Of a stretch of 64,000 bases of DNA, positions 2,758 to 64,000 are shown piece after piece. The position numbers and the translations under genes were made by a program. The notes beneath the pieces are model-generated. The model made no database searches, was not told the DNA's origin, and saw only the letters and a list, made by a program, of their open reading frames with translations. Numbering within the stretch: the stretch's first letter is position 1; the number at the start of each line of letters is the position of its first letter. Source of the stretch: Phallusia mammillata (taxonomy: Eukaryota); NCBI GenBank assembly GCA_965637545.1, contig OZ281496.1, positions 4,092,001 to 4,156,000 of the forward strand, read 5' to 3'.

Positions 2758-3043
2758 CTGAAAACAACATGTCACGGCGTTAGGGCATTTATTACAACGT
2801 TTCCTTCTTAGGGGTTTTTGTAGAATTTAATAGGGATTTTTTACGGTTAATTTGGTTGAACATGAACATACATTCAAAATACAAAACCCACTTAATTTCA
2901 GCTATCTGTTATTTAGTCGAAATCGTGACGTCACACAATGCGCATCAACGATATGATTCGATTCGCTCATGTAAAAAGGCTTAATGTCTATAAATTAGAC
3001 CATGGTACTGTTTTGCGATCTCAGGTATTTGTTTATGTTTTAG

Positions 3044-3162
3044 ACCGAATTGCATTCGACCATTTCGACCCAGCAGAAGAACCAGCGCCAATGGATGGAG
3101 ATGAGGTTCAAAACCCGGAAAACCAGTTGCAACCGGAACAAAACGAGCCTCATAGCAACTAA
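3044..3162 (+). pseudogene. Orphan terminal exon of the same mini-exon family, inverted relative to 1869-2757
   Basis: gttttag|AC, phase 1: (D)RIAFDHFDPAEEPAPMDGDEVQNPENQLQPEQNEPHSN*. Clearly similar to the 1869-1999 and 33085-33188 exons. Confidence 0.6.
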
Positions 3163-4527: not shown

Positions 4528-7500
4528 ATTCTTCGTGTGTTTTCCAGAAAAAAAGACCAAATTACTTGGTACCCTTCAGTTTAACTGTTACTCAATAAAC
4601 CATCGTCAATCGTGAATATGGTTTATTCTAATTAAATATGTCACTATCGTCAAATACCCACGTGTGATCCTCGGCTTTTGCGTTGCTGGTTTTGTTTTTT
4701 GTGAAATTATTTTCTGTTTTGCTGAAAACAGAAATGCTTGATTAAATACTGACACTTTTTGATACGTTCGTGACGAATTAAACGCAAAATTATGGATGAG
4801 ATATAATGACACCATACATCACGACAGCTTCACACTTTGCATAATTCCGATAAGTGGCGCAAAGAGCTGGGTTATTAATTTAACAACTATAGAGGGGTAG
4901 AGTTGGGAAGTACGTTTCTTTCAAATTTTAAATTTGCGAACTAACTTTTCAAGTTAGTTTTATTGAACCTGTGATGAAAATGTCTTACCCCAACCAAAAC
5001 AACCCTATCCGTCAGCATTTTTAGAGATATATACAATCAGAATATTTACTCATAATTACGTTTCAAGCAAGTTTAAAACGATGTACAAATATTCAAGCGG
5101 CTTTTTCCATCGCTGGAACAAGAAGTGTTTGAAAATGCAGCAGAGCACACTCCTTATGGAAACACTAGCCATGTACAAGTCTGTTAGAAAAATATGACCA
5201 TGAACTCTTTATAAAGTGTCGTTTTTCTCATACTTACTTGAACCTGAACAGAAACCCACAAAATTATTACCAGTATACGTACAATGGCTCCTTAACTTTT
5301 ATGTTTCCTGGTTAATGATTTTCGGATTCACTGGTACTTGTACTAGCAACAAAAAAAGCTTCTATTTTTTTGAAAAATATGTTTTTTATTACTTCTTTAT
5401 ATGTCTCAGAATTTATTCGCGATCGATGTTATGTTTGAAAAGCAGCTAATTTTAACTTTCTATCTTTTGTAATTTGATTTTTATCAAACAAGCCTTTTTC
5501 AACGAAACCCAGTGTGTTTGTTCAATGTACGCAAATAGACAAAAAATCTACGAGCCTGAATTTCCTATTACCTGTGTATTGTGGCGGTGAGGACATGCTG
5601 TATTCATTTTCACCGTATTTGACATTGCATGAAACCTAGATGACAAATCATTTTTTTAACGTTTTACTTTTATGTTTGATTGCTAAATACAAATTAAAGG
5701 AGAAAGACAAATTTTCTCTTAAAATTTCTTTGCATTTTTTACTACAAAGAGCTTTCTTACCCATGAATGATTGTTTTGGTAATTTAATAAGCAACGTAGG
5801 TCCTCGCAGTATTGAATTTTACTTGTTTATTATTATACGTGATGGTGGAATGAAAACAAATGAAGCATAATTGTTAATTAATAGTGTCATTATTTTAATT
5901 TCTTTACCGGTTTTACTTCAACACTTTCGGTACCAGCATTCGGAATGTTGATTGGTTGTTCCACTGTTTGATCTTTTAAAGTTAATTTCACCGTTTTCTT
6001 TTTCGCTATATTACAAAAAAAGTTTACTTTTTAATGCTTACATTAACCAATATTTTGCTTTTTAATAAACAACTTTAGATCATATAAAATGTGGAAAACT
6101 GACCTTTTTTAGTTGATCCCTTCATATTTTCCGAAGCTTCTTCTGTTTGTGATCGTTTTGAAACACGTGCATCCATAATTTAGGCAACAGACTGAGCAAT
6201 GTGAATACTAACACGCAATCAATGAATTTGCCGGTTTAATGTTGACTACTTAGGTTTTGTAGTTGACAGGTTGAAAAATGAAAATGTCTAAAAAGCTAAG
6301 ACGGTCTTGGAACACTGCAGCACAAGAAATTTAATTAAAATTAACCTTTTTCGGACCAATGATTTTGGACACAAATCAGGACCGTGTAAGTCTCTTATTT
6401 CGCGAATGCCTTTGCACTCAGAAACATGATCCGGGGCTTAACGTCGACACAGGGTCTATGTCTTTGCGTCTATGAAACAACTAAGCCTTACCTCCCGTCA
6501 TCAACACTTGTTTAATCGTCGATTTTAACTATTTTTAAAAATGTAAAAACGCAATAAAATTCTGGACCGAAACTCGCATAAAAACTGATAACAAAGTTAC
6601 TAAATTGACTTGAGCCAAATCCACAAACAACCTTTTAAACGTAAAGTTCTTGCAGAAAACGCTTTATACATTGTAAGCACACGAGCTGAACTGACGCACA
6701 GCGCAGAAAAACACAATTGGTCGCCGACATGTTACACATCAGCACGTCCAAACGTTTAATATCGTGGGTGCGTACGGGACGTAATTTGATCGTTGAAACG
6801 AAAGCTTTTGTTTGGAGCTGTTCCAAAACATTTTCCTGATGTCAGACGAAACGCTCTCTTTTAATTCATAACTGTTAGGCAGAGCAACGGCTTGAAACAT
6901 TATACAGGAGATTAAAAGCAATTTAATTAAAATTAAGCCCGTGTCAGGCTCTTATTTCTCTCAGCGTCTATGTCTTTGCGTCTGCTCATCACCTGACCCA
7001 TTTTCCTGTGCTTATCGTTTCGTTAGACCTACTTGTGTAATCGTCGATTTTAACTGTGCAAGTTGTAAAAATTTTTAAAACGCAATAAGGTTAATTCTTT
7101 AGCGAAACATTCACAATAAAATGGTAACGAAGTTACCAAGATCTACTTGAGCCAAGACAATACGCCTACAATCAACCCTTAAACTATAAAGGCCCGTTTA
7201 CACTGAGCGTAGCGTAGCGAAGCGAAGCGAACTTGGGCGAAGTTGAGCGAAGTTGAGCGAACGGGGTGTTTACACTGGACGTAGCGTAGCGAAGCGAAGT
7301 TGGGCGAACGGTTAACTTTTTGTTAAAAGTTGTACAAATACCACAACTGTTTGACGGAAGATATAAATGTTATTAATTATTTATCTGACACAAATGCCTT
7401 TATGTATGAATTGTATCAAAGTAATTTAAATTAATTGCTATTGTGACGTCATATTAACACATGTTTTGACCGGAAAATAAATATACGTTTAAAATTTAAG

Positions 7501-7533: not shown

Positions 7534-8912
7534 ATGAACAACCGCTCCGCATTAAAAAGGGCTCGAGTAGTCCGATTACTCGCCATTCATCGCCTTTCTA
7601 GTCAGAGCAGAACAGGAAGAAGCATCTGGGTGAAACCTACCAGACAACGACGACCTGTTTTAAGTAAGTGTAGGTTGCAAAACGGACTTTAAGAAAAAAT
7701 AACATGACTGACGTTCAATCCTTTCAGGTGAATATTATCGCCTGGTACAGGAACTGCGACTTGAACAGGTTGCGGAGTTCCAATCTTACTTTCGAATGTC
7801 GCCCGCAACTTTCGACCAGTTGCTTTCGTTGGTCGGGCCTCTCGTTTCGAGACAAACAACGAATTTGCGGAGTCCTATTTCACCCGGTGAACGACTTGCA
7901 GTAACTTTAAGGTTAGTTATAAGTTGTGTTTTCTTGCACTTGATTTCAACAGTAATATTTATGTTTTTCCAGGTATTTAATCGGTGGGATGACGTACGAG
8001 AGTTTATCACATGCTTATCGTATGTCAAGAGCATCGGTATGCTTGATAATACCTGAAACTTGCCAAGCCATTTGGCAAGTTTTGCAGCCAAACCACCTGG
8101 TAAAACCGAATGAAGATGATTTCAAGCGAATTGCCTCTGATTTTCGCAGGTTATGGCATTTTCCTAACTGCCTTGGTAGCATGGATGGTAAGCACATCCA
8201 AGTACAGGCTCCTTCCAATTCGGGTTCCCTGTACTATAACTACAAGGGCACTTTTAGTGTTGTTTTGTTCGCAGTAGTTGATGCTAACTATCGTTTTACG
8301 ATGGTTGACATCGGGGGATACGGCAAACAAAGCGATGGCAGCATTTACAGCAATTCTGTATTTGGAAGGCAGTTATCAAGCCACCAATTACCAGTTCCTC
8401 CACCACAAGCCTTGCCTGGATCATCGGAGGCCCTACCATGCGTTTTTGTTGGGGACGAAGCGTTTCCGTTACAGGAAAACTTGCTTCGTCCTTACCCAGG
8501 GAGGCAATTATCCCACCGCCAACGGGTGTTTAATTACCGGCTTTCTAGAGCCAGGCGCATCGTAGAAAACGTATTTGGTATAATGGTTTCCCGCTTCCGG
8601 GTGTTTCGCGGGCCGATTTGTTTGGCACCAGAAAGGGTGGATAATGTGGTAAAGGCGTGCGTCGTTCTTCACAACTTCCTTCGCCATGAAAGCATGTACG
8701 TTGGACCGAGTGATCTCGACCACGAAGACAGAAGTGGCGAATTACATCCAGGCAGTTGGCGCGACGAGCAAGAAAATAGTCTAGGGTGCATTCAAAGGGT
8801 TGGGCGACGCCATAGCACGCAGGCATTTGAAGTGAGGGAAAAGTTTGCCGAATACTTCTGCAGCGAAACAGGATCTGTGTCTTGGCAAAATGCCATTATT
8901 TCAAGGTGTTAG
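7534..8912 (+). CDS. Harbinger DDE transposase (HARBI1-like), 417 aa, 3 exons
   Basis: join(7534..7663,7728..7911,7973..8912) = 1254 nt, open. Motifs FRMSPATFDQL, ISPGERLAVTLRYL, GSMDGKHI, YYNYKGTFS, VGDEAFP, RARRIVENVFG, LHNF; the D-D-E triad is intact. Confidence 0.93.
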
Positions 8913-14388: not shown

Positions 14389-17300
14389 ATGTCAATTTTG
14401 CTGGTAAAGTTTGCTCTTTTCGTGGGCCTAATGACTTTATTGCATCGAGGTAAGTAAGTTTTGGCAACTATAGCAATAAAACATAGCCATTCAAAAAAAA
14501 TTGTACTCGCGGCATATAAATTTACAAACTAAATATTGCAATTTATCAAATAAAACCATTGAACAATGTGTAAGTTTATTTCTAATGGTAAATCTCATGT
14601 TCAGTGTCGGACGGTCAGTGTCACGAAGCGGAAATAACTACAAGTTCGCTAGGAGTGAACATTTTACCTCAATGTACCACATATACTCGACGTGTCATCC
14701 ACTCACTGGGGGCCACAAGAATGATTACTTATTTTGGAAGTGGAGAGCTAGCTGCAGACAACTTTTGTAAGGTAAAGTCTTATGAGTATAACCTTTAACT
14801 TCGGTACACAAAATGCTGTTGGTGCATTTCTTTTTAAACTGTAGGGCGGACAGTTTGCACACTTTCGATCTTTCTACATCTTATTGCAAGCCGTTGATTA
14901 TTATTTTTTCGATGTTTTAACCAGAAAAAAAAACAGTTTGTATGACACACGTGCGCATATAACACATTTATCTCAACTAGACGATTAAAGTAACGAACCA
15001 AAATCACTTCTTTTTAAATACTTTAACTCGATTTCTGGCTTGTTTCATATTGCCTGCTTGAAAAAAAAATTGTCGTAGACTTGATTTGGAGTTTTAATTG
15101 AAACAAAGTGGTTTTCGGAAAACGTTCGAAATTTGGTTTTGAACAAAACAGGCTGAAATTAGCCTTGACTTTTTACTCGGCCACATTTCTGTCTTATTTG
15201 TTTGACTTGGTTTAAACTGACGTGTTTTACACAATAGTTCGTTCAAGCTCGGTAAGAAGTCTTAACGAAACAAATTGTCATGAATGTGTAAATTTTAACC
15301 TTTAGCCTCATTGTGTTTAACCTAGATTTACGAGGGACCCAACGAGGAAGGTACATTGGCTGGAACGTTGGAAGGTGGAGGTTTATCTTTTCCGGTTTTT
15401 ATTGAAAGCTCTACTGTTTATATAGCTTGTGTCACAAACCTCACAACGGGAACAGTAAAAATCGTATTGCACGCTGGTAAGTCAAATTTAACACGTTTTC
15501 CAAAAAGGTTTCATTTTGTGCAATTCTGAAAAGTCACTTCGTGAACTTGGCCATCCTCTTAAGTTTATGAATTTGGAGTCAAGAGAATATGTTTATTGTG
15601 TGTTATTTTAAGGTTAATACAGGCAAAGACTTTCATTCTGTTAAGTCTCATCAGTGAAACGGGTGAACATTAAGGGTAGAGGTTTGCGCAGCCAGGCCAA
15701 ACAAGTCTCATGTTTTTTGAGTAACAGTTTAAATACATGTGGTTAAGTAACTAAGTAACTGTTCAGGATTCACAGTTGTTTTTATCGGCTGTAATGTGTG
15801 CAGTTGAACTATCAAACAACTTACGCTTATTGTGCATCAGCACGAAAGCTCCTATGGAGTTTTACATTACTGTTTTCTATGTATTTTAGCTACTTTGTGC
15901 GGAGAAGATGCTACCGGCCCGGTTTATAACTTACAGTCTCCAAACTTTCCGAGTAACTACCCAGCTACGTCTGGTTGTGTTTGGAGATTTCGCATGGAAA
16001 GCAGCACGTCCTTGGTGTTTCAATTCTCCACTTTTACCATCGAAAATAACTTTGACCTTTTATACGTAAGTGAGTGGTTATTTCTTTTTAAATTACATTG
16101 CAGAACCAAAACGGACCGAACCAGGTTTTAATCAAGCCTCAGTTTGTTCCGAGTTTGGATTTTTTTTCAAACATGTTTTATTGACACAAAAGCCGAACCT
16201 ATTTTGAAACGCCTGGCTCCAAACAAAACTTTTATTTAAATCACAACTAAGATGAACATCAATTCATAACTGGGATCAGCCCTGAAGCGTCTATGCAGAC
16301 CAGCCATCACGGCACACTCATGTATAAATCACAGTACGCCAGGCCCATTGAAGGCGCTATACCGAATCAGCCGGTCACCAAGCATTCACCACCATATGGC
16401 AAGGCGTAGGCTAGAAAAATCTAGCCTGCGGTGGGATTCGAACCCACGACAGGAGTCTTTCCGGGACTCGCGCTCTACCAACTGAGCTAAACAGGCCCAG
16501 TGGAGAATCCGCCGAAAGTCGAATCACAAGCACCGTTGCCTGCCTCGTATGCTGCACATGTCAGCTTCGTAGTAGGGGATCGCCAGATTGACCAGTATCA
16601 GGTAAGATGAACATAAATTCATAACTGGGATCAGCCCTGAAGCGTCTATGCAGACCAGCGATCGAGGCACACTCATATATAAATATCACAGTACGCCAGG
16701 CCCATTGAAGGCGCTATACCGAATCAGCCGGTCACCAAGCATTCACCACCATATGGCAAGGCGTAGGCTAGAAAAATCTAGCCTGCGGTGGGATTCGAAC
16801 CCACGACAGGAGTCTTTCCGGGACTCGCGCTCTACCAACTGAGCTAAACAGGCCCAGTGGAGAATCCGCCGAAAGTCGAATCACAAGCACCGTTGCCTGC
16901 CTCGTATGCTGCACATGTCAGCTTCGTAGTAGGGGATCGCCAGATTGACCAGTATCAGTTAAGATGAACATAAATTCATAACTGGGATCAGCCCTGAAGC
17001 GTATATAGAATACATCGTTCAGACGTTTTAATAATCTCTGTTGTCATCATCAGTGGAGGTTGTCAATCAAGCTGTAGAACGCGGTATATAAAGCACTAAG
17101 AAAAAAAGGTAAATGCCAGGTGTGTGAAGTGACGTTACAGGCGATAACAGGGAACTGGCGTTTAGAACGGTGACGTAGAAAAAAGATAAGAACCGAAGAA
17201 ATAGGTCAGGTGTTGAACAGACGCAAGGGCATGGAAACTGTGTCGATGTTGAGCTCGGAGTCATGCTTTTTGAATAGAAAGCGATTCGAGAAACAACAGT

Positions 17301-57800: not shown

Positions 57801-59251
57801 CTTTACCGACGCAGAACAATTTATTTACATCCACTGCGACGTGACCGTCTGTCATAATTCAACTGGACAATGCCCTGGACAGGTGACTTGATTAAAGTAG
57901 AGTTTGTACTTGCAACAGAGAATAAAGTTTAGCAAAATAGTGTTGGTCGAAAAAAAAAGGTCAAGGAAAATGATATGTTTTTTTTTCAGAACAAAATTCC
58001 TGAGTATTGCTCTAAAACAATCGAGATAGTATGTCTCTAAATAACTTAAGAATTTATTTGGCGTTTGTGTCCAGTTGTAGCATTAAAATTATTAGTGTGG
58101 AATGGCTTTATATTCTGTTGCTTCCATACCAAAGTTTTCTAGGTTCGTTTGCCAATACGGTTTATTTCCTGTCACCAGTTGATTTTATGTGGCTAATCAG
58201 CAAAAAGGCTGAATGGTCCGGCGCGCCTGAATCATAACATAACCTTGATAGGAATTCGACCCCCATCCTATTTGGAATCCGAACCACAATAAAAATACGA
58301 GGTTTACTGTGTGTAGCTTACATACAAATTTGAAAGTAATTTTAACCCTTTTATTTGGTTGGAGTGCGAGCAACGGTAAATATTCCGCCACAGGCTACGC
58401 TGTCCTATCTTGAAATCGCTAGGGATACCGGCCCTTAATCGGCCTGGAGAACTATGATGTAAATATATGTGTGCCGGGATGGGCTTAATTCTGTATGACG
58501 CCTTCAATGAAACTGGTGTACAATGAAATATCAATATTTGTATGATTCTTTTTGCAGTCTTGTTCTGGTAAGAAACGGCGATCTGTTGAAAACAATCGCC
58601 GCAATCAACTGCTTTCTGCAGGGCCAGTACACATTGTTCAAGATACCGCTTTCCAACTTGGTAAGACAATGAGAAAAATTTAATCTCTTTTCTAGATAAT
58701 ATTGCTGATACACGTGCTTTTGCTAAACGAATTTGTAGTTCTAGCAAGCAAGTCGCACCTCTTGGGGCATAATGACATAAGTTTTCGAAACATTTTCTCG
58801 GTTTAATATACTGTGTCTTGGTGATTGATTAGTTGGATGTATATGTGATTAATTTGACTGCTAACATTACCAACCGCACCTTTTATTCGATTTTCATAAG
58901 TTGTTTTAAAAATAAGACTGTAACTAGCATTAAAGGACACATATAAAAGGCAAATAAAATAAATGTTTGTCACAAAATATATTTCATGAGTTCGAATCCC
59001 ATCACTTGTTTTCTTTTTTTTTGTATCCGCTAATCAATCAGTACAGTTCTTCCCATATTTTTTGCTATATTTGTTAATTATGACTTTTTGTCTCTTATAC
59101 AACAGGAGAAAGAAATGAAGCGATGGAAGGAGCCGGCAACAGCTACCAACTTGTGATGTTTGTTCTTCTGGCTGTGATTGTTATTGGAGCTGGTTACATC
59201 GTATGGGGCAAACTGACCCGGGATCGCAATGCGAGACAAAATCGCCAGTAG
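48869..59251 (+). CDS. Gene B2: signal peptide - (CUB-like - CUB)x2 - ZP - furin site - TM, 778 aa, 17 exons
   Basis: join(48869..48929,51019..51185,51324..51474,51805..51977,52460..52598,52869..53029,53176..53326,54247..54422,54936..55077,55322..55367,56069..56234,56397..56554,57243..57378,57506..57576,57693..57882,58558..58660,59106..59251) = 2337 nt, open. Three splice sites differ from B1 and are inferred. Confidence 0.78.
49197..49549 (-). pseudogene. GSS: Glutathione synthetase C-terminal fragment with a frameshift, in B2 intron 1
   Basis: YVLKPQREGGGNNIYG...ISELGIYGVYLG, then after a frameshift MLENYAAGHLLCSKPKDQNDGGVATGVAMLDSPLLV*. These are hallmark eukaryotic GSS motifs; no intron lies within the fragment. 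Confidence 0.85.
50270..50957. mobile_element. hAT-type non-autonomous element, 688 bp, in B2 intron 1
   Basis: TAGGGTT...AACCCTA ends; TSD CTGGTATA / CTGGTACA; subterminal CGGATA and CGGTTAACCG repeats; empty site in the duplicated cassette near 52795. Confidence 0.8.
53365..53942. mobile_element. 578-bp solo-LTR-like insertion in a B2 intron
   Basis: TGTAA...TTACA termini and apparent 4-bp TSD CTTA; absent from the equivalent introns of B1 and B2 cassette 1; its first ~250 bp match, inverted, the regions ~23020-23470 and ~47650-48120. Confidence 0.5.
55631..56022. mobile_element. MITE, ~392 bp, in a B2 intron
   Basis: About 30-bp TIR ACGGGTGACATTAAAACGCTGAATGGGCGGGA / TCCCGCCCATTCAGCGTTTTAGTGTCACCCGT; TSD CTAG (or TA); empty site gtCTAGactt in B1 near 27620. 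Confidence 0.85.
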
Positions 59252-59929: not shown

Positions 59930-61166
59930 TATAAGCTATTGCTGCGAGGCATAGTATCAAGTTTAAAGAGCTCTTCTGGCAAATGTGATTTTATTCCGAC
60001 GTTTCGACGTCCTATACAGGTCGTCTTCATCAGGGTAAATAACACTGAATGCGACTAGTACAGTGCACGATAAACAAAGGAAAAAAGGAAAAAAAGAATA
60101 GAACGCAAGCACGTAACAACGCAACGAAAACACCGCGCGATAACAAATGATTGACCCTCTAATCAGGTGCCTGTAGCACGCTGGAAGCATCACGTCTGTT
60201 TTGATGTTCATTGTTTTGACCCGTTGGTGAATATTCCATGACTCAAGAAATAGTCTTTTCCTGTAGTCAGGCTCCCGGGCCACAACAGAAGCCGCATTAA
60301 AATCCATACGGTGGCCTTGTGATACCGCGTGATTGGACAGGGCCGACTTCTTTGCGTCGCTGTTGGCAACATCCCGCTGATGCTCTTTTCGGCGGGTGTT
60401 GAGTGACCTTCCAGTCTCCCCGATATATACTAACGGACACTCGGCGCAGGGAATAGAGTATACAACACCACGTTGTTCAAGGGTGTCGATTGGATCTTTC
60501 GGGTGACTCAGTAGCTTGCGGAGAGTATTGGCAGGTTGAACGCCAACCGCTACGCCGAAGTCACGCAACATACGCCGTAGAATATCCGTCAATTTCGGTA
60601 TGTACGGAAGTGTCACAAAACCCTCTGTTTTTGGATGGGTCACCTGTTTGGGAAACGTTGCCCGTCCATCACGGAGAATCCAGTTGGGGTAACCGTTGTA
60701 TTTCAAGGCTTTGCGAACCTTGGCCAGTTCCGCCTCGCAGTCGTCGCGATGAGTGCACAAGCGTCGTGCCTGATCTTTTAGGGAACGAACCACCCCTCTT
60801 TTCTGGTATGTGGGGTGATGCGATCGAAAATTGAGATACCTGCCGGTACTCGTTGGCTTGTGGTACACTCTCGAGTACAAGACGCCGTCATCGGTTCTTG
60901 TGACTTGAACGTCTAAAAATGGAAGACAGTTTACCGATTGGAGTTCCATGGTAAACTGAATGCCTGGTTGCGCCTCGTTGAGATGCTGTAAAAATGCCTC
61001 AACCTTGTTCTTAGCAATGACACAAAAAATGTCGTCAACATATCGCCGCCAGAATCTTGGTGGGTTGGCAAATGTTGATAAAGCTTTTCCCTCAAGCGCT
61101 TCCATTGTCATGTTTGCGACAACCCCGGAGATAAAATCACATTTGCCAGAAGAGCTCTTTAAACTT
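59930..61166 (-). mobile_element. 5'-truncated Penelope-like retroelement (RT C-terminus + GIY-YIG) with an inverted tail copy
   Basis: ORF 59963-61111: ANMTMEALE, WRRYVDD, LPFLD, VVYSIPCAECPLVYIGETGRSLNTRRKEH, RLFLES. 13-bp TSD GAGAAGTTAGTTG at 59917-59929 and 61167-61179; 61131-61168 is the reverse complement of 59957-59994. Confidence 0.9.
59985..60045 (-). ncRNA. Candidate minimal type I hammerhead ribozyme in the Penelope-like tail
   Basis: GTGTTATTTACC-CTGATGA-AGACGACCTGTATAGGACGTC-GAAA-CG-TC-GGAATAAAATCAC. Core CUGAUGA/GAAA, stem II GACG/CGTC, palindromic ACGT stem III, bulged stem I (CC/GG, TTATT/AATAA, GTG/CAC). Confidence 0.6.
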
Positions 61167-61290
61167 GAGAAGTTAGTTGGTTGGGTGAAGTTTGTTTTGT
61201 GACGAGCGTCTGTTTCGTTTCAGTGCTATATATTTTGCAATTGGTACCTTGCTTTAGTGAAAAAAAGTATCATTGGCTGCTTTGCATACT

Positions 61291-63794
61291 ATGGGTTCAT
61301 GTTTTTCGAGAAACGTGACAGAAACAAGAAAACATCAGGAAAAACACGAGTTTTGCCACAATGGTAAGTCTTTCATCGATCAGTGAGATTTTTCCGTTGT
61401 CCCAAAAATTAGCTCAGTAATGCCAGTTGTAACGCAAGTACCAGTAATGTATATTATGTTTTTTTGCAAGAATTCGTATGTGAGATCTCTGAAAATTAGA
61501 GATTTTGAATGATGTGAGATTTTTTTATGTCCCGTTTGCTGGACGAAATTGGCAATATTTTTTACCAGCTTACATGAACCGTTGTCAGTAGATACGATTA
61601 TTCTCTTTTGCGTAGATACGGTTAGACGTCCACTCTGGTGCTTCAAATTAGATTGAAAAACGCGCATGTCAGATCTCAACTATAGGCTTCTTCCCACTAA
61701 CACTCCACACAAGGTTCCAACAGTTTACTTGTAACAAATCCCTTGCTGGCTTCAATTAGCAAGATGTAGTTTCTTCAACGGAAACCAGATGGATAAACTG
61801 GCGGACGGTTTTCAAAGGAAATATCAGGGCATAAACACAATAGAAAAATGCCGGTCTAAACAATATCACCGTAGCTTTTGGACGAGGACTTTAAAATAGT
61901 TATTTGTTGGCGAGCTACGTCATACTGCAGGTAACAAAGTACACTTCAAATCAGGCATATTGTCACAACAAAAGGTTTAACAATACAAGACGATGGTTAT
62001 TGGCTAATTATTGACAAAGATACACAAGCAAACAAAACAACACTTACCAAAACAACTTGGTCATGAATTGCTGGCAGACTTTAGACCAGCGCTTCCCAAA
62101 CTCGGGTGCGCGGACCTTCAGGGGTCCGTGAAGCAATTTTGCGGGGTCCGCGAAAAGGTTGACGTGCCTCTATAATCTCATTTGGCGTCAATTTGTGTCA
62201 TTGAATAGGTTTAAATCAAAGTACAATTAAAGATCCACTGTCTCCATTACTATACAATAGATAGCCTTTATTGCATGGCAACTATCATTGTTTGCGCAAT
62301 ATCGTAATGTTTTCTGTTTTGTCTGTGAAATCACCAACCGTCTTTGGATCGTTGTTATGTGTAATTTTGCATACCTAATAAGCTAAAATTCTGTAAATCA
62401 ACTTTCGTATTGCTAAAATACACCTTCAGGCTTAAGGTCCGCGCGTGTCCTCGATATAATGGCAAAGTGACCGTTTTGCAAACAACAACAACAATGAAAA
62501 CCTTTGAAAACCACTAAGTTAGAAAGTTATTACATTCAAAAGAATCGTGACTGTACTAGTGTACTAGAAGAAACAATGGTTTTGCTTTTTTTCTATACCA
62601 TTCTTTGATTTTTTATAGGGCCGCGAAATATCAAAATAATTGCAAAGGGTCCACCAGGCAAAATTTTTAGAAGAGTTTGGGAACCGCTGCTTAAGACGTT
62701 AGACAAAGAATTAATTCGTAACTTAACAAATATATTAGTATCATGTTTATGTGTTTTTCCTGCAAATTCCTTTTTGTACAAAAAGCTTTTTTTATGTTAA
62801 AATGTGTTTTTCTTTTTGACAAATATGGCAAAGACCTGTTTTTGTTTAATTTAGTTGAGAAAAAAGCGATAAGAATAAGTTTGAAGAAGGAACCAGGGCA
62901 TCCCCCACCACTTACTATAATCCCTACACCAGAAATTGATGATAATGACGTGAGTAGAGTGGATAGAAGGTTTATGGTTTAGGTCCTTACATACTAGAAC
63001 TAGTTTGCAAATATTAACAATGCGTAGGAGACCGGCTTAACTTGGTATAACGCCTTATTGGGCCTGGCGTACTTTGGTTTGTACATGAGTGTGCCGTGAT
63101 CGCTGGTCTGCATGACCGCTACAGAATTCCAGTATGAATATATGTTTAACTAAGCTATGTTGTTTTTATTGCTAACTTTTAAATCTTAGGAATGGTCCTC
63201 TGCATCAACACTGAACGAGTTTCATATGCGGGTGAGAACATAAACTTCATTTGCTAACATTCGGAAATACCTGTATTATATTCGGAAATAACATTCGGAA
63301 ATAACGATTATATTGTCGGGTGTGTTACCTGTCGTTACTTGTGACAGTCGCTTTTACATCTCAAAAGCAGCAATTTCGTAATTGGACGGAGTTTCATTTA
63401 GTATTACTACATTTACGAACAAGTAAATTACGCTTTTTAGCGTGAGTAAAATGGATAACAAATAAGGTGTAAAATCGAACATAATTTATATGATCCAAAT
63501 ATAATTAACCAACAAAATACGAAACTGCGCGTTTTTATAATATCTCTGTAAAACTAATTTTGTGGTGAACCACTAAATCAATCCAGAAAACCTAATATTG
63601 AGAAAAATATTCGACGAAAAATAGTTGGCTGAAACTGCGTGGTTTTTGTATTTTAAATGTATCATATTCAACCAAGCTAACTGGTAAAATATAGCTTTTA
63701 AATACTATATAAACTCCCAGAGATAAAATGTTGTAATGAATGTCCTAACACTGTGATGTGTTGATTTCAGGAGACGGAGTCGGCACGTAGGAGG
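61291..63794 (+). CDS. 5' part of a mini-exon gene encoding a candidate N-myristoylated, low-complexity protein; continues beyond the window
   Basis: join(61291..61363,62855..62949,63190..63231,63771..63794), GT-AG, phases 1,0,0,0: MGSCFSRNVTETRKHQEKHEFCHN|VEKKAIRISLKKEPGHPPPLTIIPTPEIDDND|EWSSASTLNEFHMR|ETESARRR. The last exon and its introns are homologous to 2529-2925 (- strand). Confidence 0.6.
62087..62516. mobile_element. hAT-type MITE of the same family as 48378-48797
   Basis: CAGCGCTTCCCAAAC ... TTTGAAAACCACTA ends; colinear internal similarity (ggggtccgtga, caaagta-aatt, cttaagg-ccgc); TSD decayed. Confidence 0.7.
63030..63150 (+). repeat. Diverged copy of the body of the tRNA-derived repeat found at 16248-17002
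   Basis: gggcctggcgtact...catgagtgtgccgtgat-gctggtctgcat matches the minus-strand unit body. Confidence 0.7.
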
Positions 63795-64000
63795 GTAAGT
63801 AAAAATTATTTGTTGTTTTAAAACATGCAACACTGTTGATAGATAATGTCAATTTCAAAGACAAATTTTACAAAAAAAGTATGCTTGGGGTTGATAACCA
63901 CCGGTTAATGTTTGTTGTGTATTTGGTCACCAGTTATATATTTGCTGGCTGTTACAAACCAACAAAAGACAAAAAGTTGTAATAATTTCGTGAACTCCAT

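What the first reader, a model, noticed from the sequence alone, without database searches (positions are those of the whole stretch)
61291..64000. Unrecognised mini-exon gene encoding a candidate myristoylated/palmitoylated disordered protein beside the ZP array
Seen: exon 1 starts MGSCFSR and ends in a gtaagt donor. Exons of 95, 42 and 24 nt splice in frame, and the paralog at 1869-2757 supplies downstream 33-, 42-, 61- and 131-nt exons (MELDSGVE, RRSSSSSSEE, PPPNVNRPPP, FAFDIFDPNG, acidic Q/N tail). The run of phase-0 exons of 42/24/33/42 nt is symmetric and so freely skippable. Established: MGxxxS with a nearby Cys is the N-myristoylation/palmitoylation consensus, and DSGxx(x)S is a beta-TrCP-type degron. 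Inference: a lipid-anchored, phosphoregulated adaptor co-duplicating with the CUB-ZP genes, possibly a partner. The AFDxFDPNG motif weakly recalls an EF-hand entry helix. None of this is visible in the ORF track.
Basis: partly seen in the sequence, partly recalled or inferred. Interest (0 to 1): 0.7.

Follow-up and report, generated by a model that had tools for sequence, protein, structure and literature searches.

The report
Lipid-anchor-type mini-exon gene family
The flagged stretch is the front half of a real-looking nine-exon gene for a small, acidic, floppy protein with a fat-anchor type start. It belongs to a sea-squirt-specific family that has been copied along with neighbouring CUB-ZP surface-protein genes, but no RNA evidence could be obtained and its function is only inferred.

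Summary
Exons of 73, 95, 42 and 24 nt at 61291-63794 have canonical splice sites and join in frame. Five more exons lie just past the window end, giving a 174-aa acidic protein with no hydrophobic segment and a disordered tail.

- **Family:** 16 copies of the MGSCFSR first exon lie on contig C3, plus one solitary, divergent complete gene at 10.3 Mb that starts MGACLSK with the same exon phases. The tail exon has at least 125 copies, nearly all in a 2.2 Mb stretch.
- **Coding signal:** exon-length changes are multiples of 3, a -1/-2 frameshift pair in this copy restores the frame, tail-exon dN/dS is about 0.45, and exons are indel-poor compared with introns.
- **Neighbours:** the genes sit tail to tail with CUB-ZP genes far more often than chance.
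- **Relatives:** none in Pfam, PDB or 1.84 billion protein representatives.
- **Not supported:** the beta-TrCP degron (absent from this copy) and the EF-hand hint.
- **Untested:** lipidation, expression and partnership with CUB-ZP.
- **This copy's blemishes:** altered exon-5 acceptor, promoter cut at -115, MITE in intron 1.

The scan had already noted this paired cassette on other DNA of the same chromosome (s1-375439).

The parts
61190..61290 (+). Conserved promoter-proximal block and 5' UTR, with a TATA-like box at about 61228-61234, 57-63 nt upstream of the ATG
   Evidence: about 115 nt upstream of the ATG align across nine copies of both subtypes. In this copy the similarity stops at about -115; similarity to the neighbouring copy starts at 61190. 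Promoter function is inferred.
61291..61363 (+). Exon 1 (73 nt, ends in phase 1): start codon and MGSCFSR acylation-type N-terminus
   Evidence: Relative to all other copies (76 nt) it carries a -1 and a -2 deletion that together restore the frame.
62087..62689 (.). MITE-like insertion of about 600 bp in intron 1, with 17-nt terminal inverted repeats
   Evidence: One search shows the inverted repeats; dozens of roughly 90% identical copies on seven large contigs and one small one, and the insertion is absent from most paralogs of the gene.
62855..62949 (+). Exon 2 (95 nt, phase 1 to 0), the fastest-changing exon of the family
   Evidence: dN/dS is about 0.9, and 16-30% of its nucleotides differ between copies whose intron 1 differs by 5-8%.
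63190..63231 (+). Exon 3 (42 nt, phase 0), present only in the A-type copies
63771..63794 (+). Exon 4 (24 nt, phase 0). The gene continues beyond the window in locus L009: exon 5 at 3020-3043, exon 6 at 4612-4644, exon 7 at 4919-4960, exon 8 at 5182-5242, exon 9 at 5323-5453 with stop TAA
1869..2757 (-). 5'-truncated paralog with exons at 2734-2757, 2496-2528, 2230-2271, 2083-2143 and 1869-1999. It lacks exons 1-3, and similarity to the full gene ends near 2921
3046..3162 (+). Isolated tail-exon relic (36-residue version of the AFDxFDP acidic tail plus stop) with no upstream exons of its own
59099..59251 (+). Terminal coding exon (transmembrane helix, short tail, stop) of the upstream CUB-ZP gene. 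It shows that gene ends before exon 1
59963..61111 (-). 382-aa ORF of a mobile-element fragment inserted about 115 nt upstream of the start codon
   Evidence: ORF; GIY-YIG match below threshold, E 0.0038; promoter similarity to paralogs breaks here. 'Penelope-like' is my recollection and was not tested.

Best explanation
This is one copy of a sea-squirt-restricted protein-coding gene family. Nine small exons encode a 174-aa acidic, intrinsically disordered protein.

Its start (Met-Gly-Ser-Cys-Phe-Ser-Arg) fits the rules for co-translational N-myristoylation of Gly2 followed by palmitoylation of Cys4. The protein would then sit on the cytoplasmic face of a membrane. From there a basic, variable proximal segment, a serine/acid cluster, a proline-rich NRPPxN stretch and a conserved C-terminal F-x-F-D-x-F-D-P motif with an acidic tail would hang free, most plausibly as docking motifs.

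The middle of the gene is a chain of duplicated phase-0 mini-exon units whose number differs between copies. The gene is physically coupled to CUB-ZP membrane-protein genes (ZP gene, then this gene, then a convergent ZP gene), and the block has been amplified as a unit.

Shown here: exon structure, frame conservation, family size, motif conservation, genomic pairing, and absence of detectable relatives. Inferred: transcription, lipidation, membrane location, motif function, and any link to CUB-ZP proteins.
For: **Gene model.** Canonical splice sites and closed frames for all nine exons.

**Copies.** 16 first-exon copies, plus a solitary complete gene at C3:10.306 Mb whose first exon is only 42% identical yet keeps M-G-x-C-x-S and the same phase-1/phase-0 exon pattern.

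**Motif.** A PS00008-type N-terminus with Cys in positions 3-6 occurs in 16 of 17 first exons, against 5 of 1546 open ATGs in the window.

**Frame conservation.**
- Exon-length differences between copies are all multiples of 3: exon 1 73/76, exon 2 92/95/89, exon 5 24/27/33, exon 8 55/61/64, exon 9 119/131.
- In this copy a -1 and a -2 deletion 27 nt apart restore the frame.

**Selection.**
- dN/dS is about 0.42-0.48 for the tail exon and 0.2-0.6 for exon 1.
- Exons 7-9 are 83-91% identical with 4-23 gap columns. Flanking introns are 76-83% identical with 137-419 gap columns.
- 110 of 125 tail-exon copies have no stop. A simple neutral simulation gives 47-68% open frames at comparable divergence.

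**Regulatory region.** A TATA-containing upstream block is conserved.

**Protein.** Net charge -13, mean hydropathy -1.16, no hydrophobic segment. The AlphaFold2 model of the tail has no secondary structure (pLDDT 63).

**Pairing.** 33 of 125 tail exons have a convergent ZP terminal exon within 4 kb, 30 of them at 1.2-1.75 kb, against 10 +/- 3 by chance.
Against: - No RNA evidence.
- The profile search of 1.84 billion representatives found no protein with this tail. Either the family is unannotated and lineage-restricted, or it is not a gene product anyone has seen.
- Exon 2 evolves neutrally or faster (dN/dS about 0.9).
- Many array members are truncated or rearranged, and some close copies have broken splice sites: c7 has lost the exon 9 acceptor, and c5 has a GC donor at exon 3.
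- This copy has an altered exon-5 acceptor (CAG to CAA). Use of the first remaining AG would shift the frame into a stop; only the next AG, or skipping the exon, keeps the frame.
- This copy's promoter is cut at -115 by a mobile-element fragment.
- Paralog copies are not independent, so the open-frame and dN/dS statistics overstate the support.
Confidence: 0.6

Rival explanations
1. Passenger or pseudogene. The family, or at least this copy, is no longer functional. The exons are relics carried along because they lie inside the block that is amplified together with the CUB-ZP genes, and the open frames persist only because the duplications are recent.
For: Many truncated or rearranged copies exist: the window's minus-strand paralog lacks exons 1-3, there is an isolated tail exon at 3046-3162, and c3 and c6 are truncated. 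A-type copies are 94-100% identical, so little time has passed. This copy has an altered exon-5 acceptor, a truncated promoter and a MITE in intron 1. Exon 2 has dN/dS of about 0.9. There is no matching protein in public collections.
Against: - The frame was restored by two compensating deletions in exon 1.
- All exon-length changes are multiples of 3.
- Tail-exon dN/dS is below 0.5.
- Exons are indel-poor compared with introns.
- The acylation motif is kept in the 42%-identical solitary gene outside the array.
Confidence: 0.25
2. The mini-exons are alternative 3' exons, giving a long cytoplasmic tail, of the upstream same-strand CUB-ZP gene. On this reading the MGSCFSR exon is not a true first exon.
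For: Ten of the eleven plus-strand first-exon copies, this one included, have a same-strand ZP terminal exon 1.1 kb upstream (2.2 kb here because of the insertion). None was listed upstream of the five minus-strand copies. The transmembrane exon is followed by phase-0 exons that could in principle be joined in frame.
Against: The ZP transmembrane exon carries its own conserved stop 6-15 codons after the helix in all five window copies, and has no conserved donor. Exon 2 needs a phase-1 partner, which only exon 1 supplies. The solitary gene at 10.3 Mb has the same structure with no ZP exon within 100 kb. A conserved TATA-like block precedes exon 1.
Confidence: 0.04
3. The exons belong to a transposable element or are chance open segments inside repeats.
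For: Intron 1 contains a MITE, introns 2 and 5 contain SINE-like repeats, and a mobile-element ORF lies 180 bp upstream.
Against: The exons themselves occur only in the C3 array and at C3:10.3 Mb, not genome-wide. The intronic MITE, by contrast, is on seven large contigs and one small one. No transposon domain was found in any exon.
Confidence: 0.02

Closest known systems
Dual-acylated (SH4-type) N-termini of Src-family kinases, G-alpha i/o and protozoan HASPB/GAP45 (from my own knowledge)
   Same: Met-Gly at the start, a small residue at position 3, Ser at position 6, a basic residue at position 7 and a Cys within residues 3-6. That is the pattern that directs myristoylation followed by palmitoylation and membrane anchoring (pattern test).
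   Different: Only the seven-residue motif is shared. There is no kinase, G-protein or other domain and no homology, and lipidation was not shown.
MARCKS / BASP1 / GAP-43 type acylated, acidic, natively unfolded membrane-associated proteins (from my own knowledge)
   Same: Small, acidic (net charge -13), predicted disordered, with a lipid-anchor-type N-terminus.
   Different: No sequence or Pfam relationship. No basic effector domain. Multi-copy and lineage-restricted rather than conserved and single-copy.
Schistosome micro-exon genes (MEGs; bioRxiv 10.1101/2023.06.21.545858, abstract seen)
   Same: Lineage-specific multi-copy genes built largely of very short symmetric exons (here 24, 24, 33 and 42 nt, all phase 0) separated by long introns. 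The number of mini-exon units varies between copies.
   Different: MEGs encode secreted proteins with a signal peptide. This product has a hydrophilic acylation-type start and no hydrophobic segment. There is no homology, and exon skipping was not shown here.
Tightly linked receptor/partner gene pairs in ascidian self-recognition, such as Ciona s-Themis/v-Themis (from my own knowledge)
   Same: A diversified extracellular-protein gene physically coupled to a second, unrelated gene, with the pair inherited and duplicated as a block.
   Different: Different protein types. Nothing here shows polymorphism, gamete expression or any interaction, so the resemblance is only in the linkage.

Membership tests
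N-myristoylated proteins (NMT substrates) | Gly2 after the initiator Met, an uncharged small residue at 3, S/T/A/G/C/N at 6 and no Pro at 7 (PROSITE PS00008-type pattern at the true N-terminus) | tested here: met
   met in this copy and in 16 of 17 first exons. The one exception (Gly2 to Asp) is a copy with other defects. Background is 5 of 1546 open ATGs.
N-myristoylated proteins (NMT substrates) | Myristate actually attached to Gly2 | not testable with these tools
   Needs metabolic labelling or mass spectrometry.
Dual-acylated membrane anchors | Cys within a few residues of the myristoyl-Gly, available for palmitoylation | tested here: met
   Cys4 in all 17 first exons. Cys4 is invariant even in the 42%-identical solitary gene. 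Palmitoylation itself was not tested.
EF-hand calcium-binding proteins | 12-residue Ca-binding loop flanked by helices, with a Pfam EF-hand match | tested here: not met
   no EF-hand match at E<=10 for the tail exon; no helix predicted. By my reading the DGDEGR stretch lacks Gly6, the hydrophobic residue at position 8 and Glu12.
beta-TrCP substrates (DSGxx(x)S degron) | D-S-G-x(2,3)-S present in the protein and conserved | tested here: not met
   this copy reads D-S-R. D-S-G occurs only in the truncated paralog at 2496-2528, and other copies read E-S-G or E-C-G.
Schistosome-type micro-exon genes | Run of short symmetric exons | tested here: met
   internal exons of 42, 24, 24, 33 and 42 nt, all phase 0; variable numbers of 21-42 nt units in other copies.
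Schistosome-type micro-exon genes | Signal peptide / secreted product, and homology to MEG families | tested here: not met
   hydrophilic N-terminus and no hydrophobic segment; no relatives.
Cytoplasmic tail of the CUB-ZP gene (same transcription unit) | ZP transmembrane exon open at its 3' end, with a conserved donor compatible with the mini-exons | tested here: not met
   a conserved in-frame stop 6-15 codons after the helix in all five window copies, and no conserved donor.
Transposable element | Dispersed copies and/or a transposon protein domain | tested here: not met
   the exons occur only on C3; no domains. The intron 1 insertion alone behaves as a MITE.

The most novel reading that the evidence does not exclude
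The acylated disordered proteins are the intracellular adaptors of the neighbouring CUB-ZP membrane proteins. Each amplified cassette would then encode a matched surface receptor plus its own membrane-tethered signalling partner. The hypervariable exon 2 and the variable mini-exon chain would diversify in step with the variable CUB heads, making a receptor-adaptor recognition system (for example for allorecognition or gamete self/non-self discrimination) of a type not described before.
Probability: 0.08. Interest if true: 0.8.

Novelty: new variant of a known kind. Interest (0 to 1): 0.4.

Why it matters
If expressed, this is an unannotated, taxonomically restricted gene family invisible to ORF-based and homology-based annotation, because its longest coding exon is 131 nt. 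It sits inside one of the largest gene arrays of this sea-squirt genome.

It would add a cytoplasmic, lipid-tethered component to a locus so far described only by its extracellular CUB-ZP proteins. It would also give a concrete candidate to test for coupling between the two. And it is a clean example of mini-exon unit duplication outside schistosomes.

If it is not expressed, it is simply passenger DNA in a segmental-duplication array.

Tried and rejected

**Joined model.** All searches were exon by exon and by reference. Whole-protein homology, structure prediction and exact-protein look-up in assemblies were therefore left out.

One script containing typed peptide strings came back unrun. 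I redid it using references only.

**Searches that found nothing.**
- Pfam on exon peptides: nothing.
- Profile of 15 tail exons against 1.84 billion representatives: only two unrelated repeat proteins, an arthropod-like chitin-binding-type repeat and a bacterial PKD-like repeat, both matching a short F-D-x-x-D-P string.
- PDB profile search: only chance FDPN strings.
- ESM Atlas: no usable hit.
- Literature search on ascidian CUB/ZP arrays: nothing on this locus.

**Readings rejected.**
- EF-hand, beta-TrCP degron, and FFAT, AP-2 or GAE-type motif readings of the tail. The motif comparisons are from memory and none fits the consensus.
- ZP-gene cytoplasmic tail.
- Transposon origin of the exons.

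**First exon of other copies.** A first exon for the roughly 100 other tail-exon copies was sought by regex, profile and DNA similarity. None was found. Those copies have unknown 5' ends or are relics.
Full report
**Position and context**

The window is C3:4092001-4156000 of a 240 Mb assembly. Earlier notes of this scan call the organism a sea squirt, which I did not verify independently.

The finding covers the last 2.7 kb of the window. I fetched the next 20 kb (loci L009 and L010). An L009 position equals the window position minus 61000.

**1. The observation**

Reading the sequence and translating the proposed exons confirms the four exons:

| Exon | Window coordinates | Length | Notes |
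|---|---|---|---|
| 1 | 61291-61363 | 73 nt | ATG, 24 codons beginning MGSCFSR, one extra base, donor GTAAGT |
| 2 | 62855-62949 | 95 nt | frame closes, 73+95 = 168 |
| 3 | 63190-63231 | 42 nt | phase 0 |
| 4 | 63771-63794 | 24 nt | phase 0 |

All four have pyrimidine-rich AG acceptors and GT(A/G)AG donors. An in-frame TGA lies 33 nt upstream of the ATG, directly after a possible acceptor, so the ATG is the first usable start in that frame.

The gene's own 3' half lies just past the window:

| Exon | L009 coordinates | Length |
|---|---|---|
| 5 | 3020-3043 | 24 nt |
| 7 | 4919-4960 | 42 nt |
| 8 | 5182-5242 | 61 nt |
| 9 | 5323-5453 | 131 nt, stop TAA |

Counted exon by exon and never joined, the product is 174 residues. 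It has net charge -13 and mean hydropathy -1.16, is rich in E, P, S, R, N and D, and has no hydrophobic segment.

**2. Family**

DNA search of the genome found a 100% identical twin 74 kb away and about ten further copies on the same contig. It also showed that window 62080-62693 is a separate repeat with dozens of copies on seven large contigs and one small one. That repeat has 17-nt terminal inverted repeats, so it is a MITE sitting in intron 1 of this copy and its twin only.

- **First exon.** The peptide has 16 matches, all on C3:3.09-5.13 Mb. A profile adds only one more, at C3:10.306 Mb.
- **Solitary gene.** That copy (L025) is a complete six-exon gene starting MGACLSK. It has a 73-nt phase-1 first exon, an 89-nt second exon, phase-0 internal exons, a 55-nt phase-0-to-1 exon and a 131-nt tail exon.
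- **Tail exon.** It is far more abundant, with at least 125 matches. All but the solitary copy lie on C3:2.93-5.16 Mb, and 110 have no stop.
- **Subtypes with the acylation-type exon 1.** A-type has nine exons and 174-175 residues (this copy and about six others). B-type has exons 1, 2, 4 and 5, a 64-nt exon 8 and exon 9, about 138 residues.
- **Other tail-bearing loci.** They contain variable chains of 21-42-nt phase-0 mini-exons with conserved TTTCAG / GTAAGTAAAA borders but very different contents, or tandem repeats of single units. No recognisable first exon was found within 8-9 kb. Their 5' ends are unknown, or they are relics.

**3. Is it coding?**

Evidence for:
- (a) Every exon-length difference between copies is a multiple of 3.
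- (b) This copy's exon 1 differs from all others by a -1 and a -2 deletion 27 nt apart. Together they restore the frame while changing nine residues. Either deletion alone would run exon 2 into a stop.
- (c) Nei-Gojobori counts on three independent pairs give pN/pS of 0.42 for the tail exon and 0.59 for exon 1, the latter on very few changes. Pooled over all pairs the values are 0.48 for the tail exon and 0.24 for exon 1.
- (d) Across four divergent comparisons, exons 7-9 are 83-91% identical with 4-23 gap columns. The flanking introns are 76-83% identical with 137-419 gap columns.
- (e) 88% of tail exons are open. A simple neutral simulation gives 47-68% at similar divergence.
- (f) About 115 nt upstream of the ATG, including a TATA-like box, is conserved across subtypes.

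Evidence against:
- Copies are not independent.
- Exon 2 shows pN/pS of about 0.9.
- Exon 2 differs by 16-30% of its nucleotides between copies whose adjacent intron differs by only 5-8%. Silent and replacement changes are raised alike, which fits a mosaic history (gene conversion around exon 1) better than positive selection.
- Several close copies have broken splice sites or are truncated.

There is no RNA evidence.

**4. State of this particular copy**

The frame is open throughout, but the copy has four blemishes:
- the compensated frameshift in exon 1;
- the exon-5 acceptor changed from CAG to CAA. The first remaining AG would give a 26-nt exon that shifts the frame and brings a TAG into frame; only the AG two bases further on (24 nt) or skipping keeps the frame;
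- promoter similarity cut at -115 by a 382-aa mobile-element ORF at 59963-61111;
- the MITE in intron 1.

The twin at C3:4227.4 kb is identical over at least 6.8 kb, starting inside that mobile-element fragment. This is either a very recent duplication or an assembly duplicate.

**5. Surroundings**

The upstream CUB-ZP gene ends at 59099-59251. The transmembrane exon carries its own stop 6-15 codons after the helix in all five window copies, and there is no conserved donor. The mini-exons are therefore not its cytoplasmic tail.

A convergent CUB-ZP terminal exon lies 1.35 kb beyond exon 9. Genome-wide, 33 of 125 tail exons have such a convergent exon within 4 kb, 30 of them at 1.2-1.75 kb, against 10 +/- 3 for random placement in the array. 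Ten of the eleven plus-strand first-exon copies, this one included, also have a same-strand ZP terminal exon 1.1 kb upstream (2.2 kb here); none was listed for the five minus-strand copies.

The amplified unit is thus ZP gene, then mini-exon gene, then an inverted ZP gene. This agrees with earlier scan note s1-375439, made on DNA 265 kb away. Linkage alone explains the co-duplication, and nothing shows a functional tie.

**6. What the protein would be**

The N-terminus meets the PROSITE-type myristoylation pattern with Cys4 in 16 of 17 first exons. The exception (Gly2 to Asp) is a copy with other defects. The pattern is met by only 5 of 1546 open ATGs in the window. M1, G2, C4 and S6 are invariant even in the 42%-identical solitary gene.

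By established knowledge of N-myristoyltransferase and of dual-acylated proteins (Src-family SH4 domains, G-alpha i/o, HASPB), such a start predicts myristoyl-Gly2 plus palmitoyl-Cys4 and binding to the cytoplasmic face of a membrane.

The conserved C-terminal module is NRPPxN-G-x-x-A-F-D-x-F-D-P-N-G, then P-A-E-E, D-G-D-E-G and a Q/N/P-rich end. AlphaFold2 predicts it to be unstructured. I read it as a short linear docking motif of unknown partner.

- **Degron.** This copy reads D-S-R, and D-S-G occurs only in the truncated paralog.
- **EF-hand.** No Pfam match at E<=10 and no helix.

The serine-acid run (RRSSSSSSEE) is present in A-type, the truncated paralog and some others, but absent from B-type.

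**7. Comparison with what is known**

No relatives were found:
- Pfam: nothing.
- 15-sequence tail profile against 1.84 billion representatives: two unrelated repeat proteins only.
- PDB: chance strings only.
- ESM Atlas: no usable hit.

Because the spliced model could not be submitted as one protein, whole-length searches were not done. The absence of relatives therefore rests on the 42-residue tail and short exon peptides only.

Functionally the nearest kinds are dual-acylated anchors and MARCKS/BASP1-like acidic disordered proteins. Architecturally the nearest is the schistosome micro-exon gene, from which it differs by lacking a signal peptide.

**8. Verdict**

This is a real sequence feature and very probably a genuine, lineage-restricted gene family. 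The lipid-anchor reading is well founded as a prediction. The degron and EF-hand readings fail, and the partnership with CUB-ZP proteins is unsupported beyond linkage. Interest is moderate until transcripts are shown.

Noticed in passing
window 59963-61111 (-), with 43-nt inverted copies at 59957-59998 and 61126-61168: A 382-aa ORF with a sub-threshold GIY-YIG endonuclease match (E 0.0038). It looks to me like a Penelope-type retroelement fragment. It is inserted about 115 nt upstream of the gene's start codon and is shared with the identical twin copy from 60917 onward.
   Followed up: partly
window 7989-8912 (+): An intact 307-aa Harbinger/PIF-type DDE transposase ORF (Pfam DDE_Tnp_4, E 5e-36) inside the CUB-ZP array.
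   Followed up: partly
window 63019-63154; also window 16247-16386 and 16610-16743 (-), and L009 4100-4330: A SINE-like repeat. In L009 it is preceded by a tRNA-like segment with a GGTTCAAATCC box. It is present in introns 2 and 5 of the gene and elsewhere in the window.
   Followed up: no
L012 3659-3784 (intron 5 of the copy at C3:5.08 Mb): A His/Asp-rich repeat (HGDDHH-type units) is open in one frame inside the intron of one paralog only. Its origin is unknown.
   Followed up: no
L028 (C3:3856101-3866100, minus strand): Four tail exons in tandem at a spacing of about 780 bp, each followed by a partial second copy of the tail end. This is local amplification of the last exon alone.
   Followed up: no
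L038 (C3:3778001-3787000, minus strand), rc positions 5914-6713: The serine-run exon unit (exon 7 plus flanks) is repeated three times with a 334-bp period in another family member.
   Followed up: no
Exon 2 versus intron 1 in copies c4, c9, c11, m32 and m33: Exon 1, its promoter and the first 250 nt of intron 1 differ by only 5-8% between subtypes, while exon 2 differs by 16-30% and the intron before exon 9 by up to 32%. This is a mosaic pattern suggesting gene conversion around the 5' end.
   Followed up: partly
window 2925-2935: A perfect TGACGTCA (CRE-like) palindrome lies at the junction between the truncated minus-strand paralog and the plus-strand tail-exon relic.
   Followed up: no
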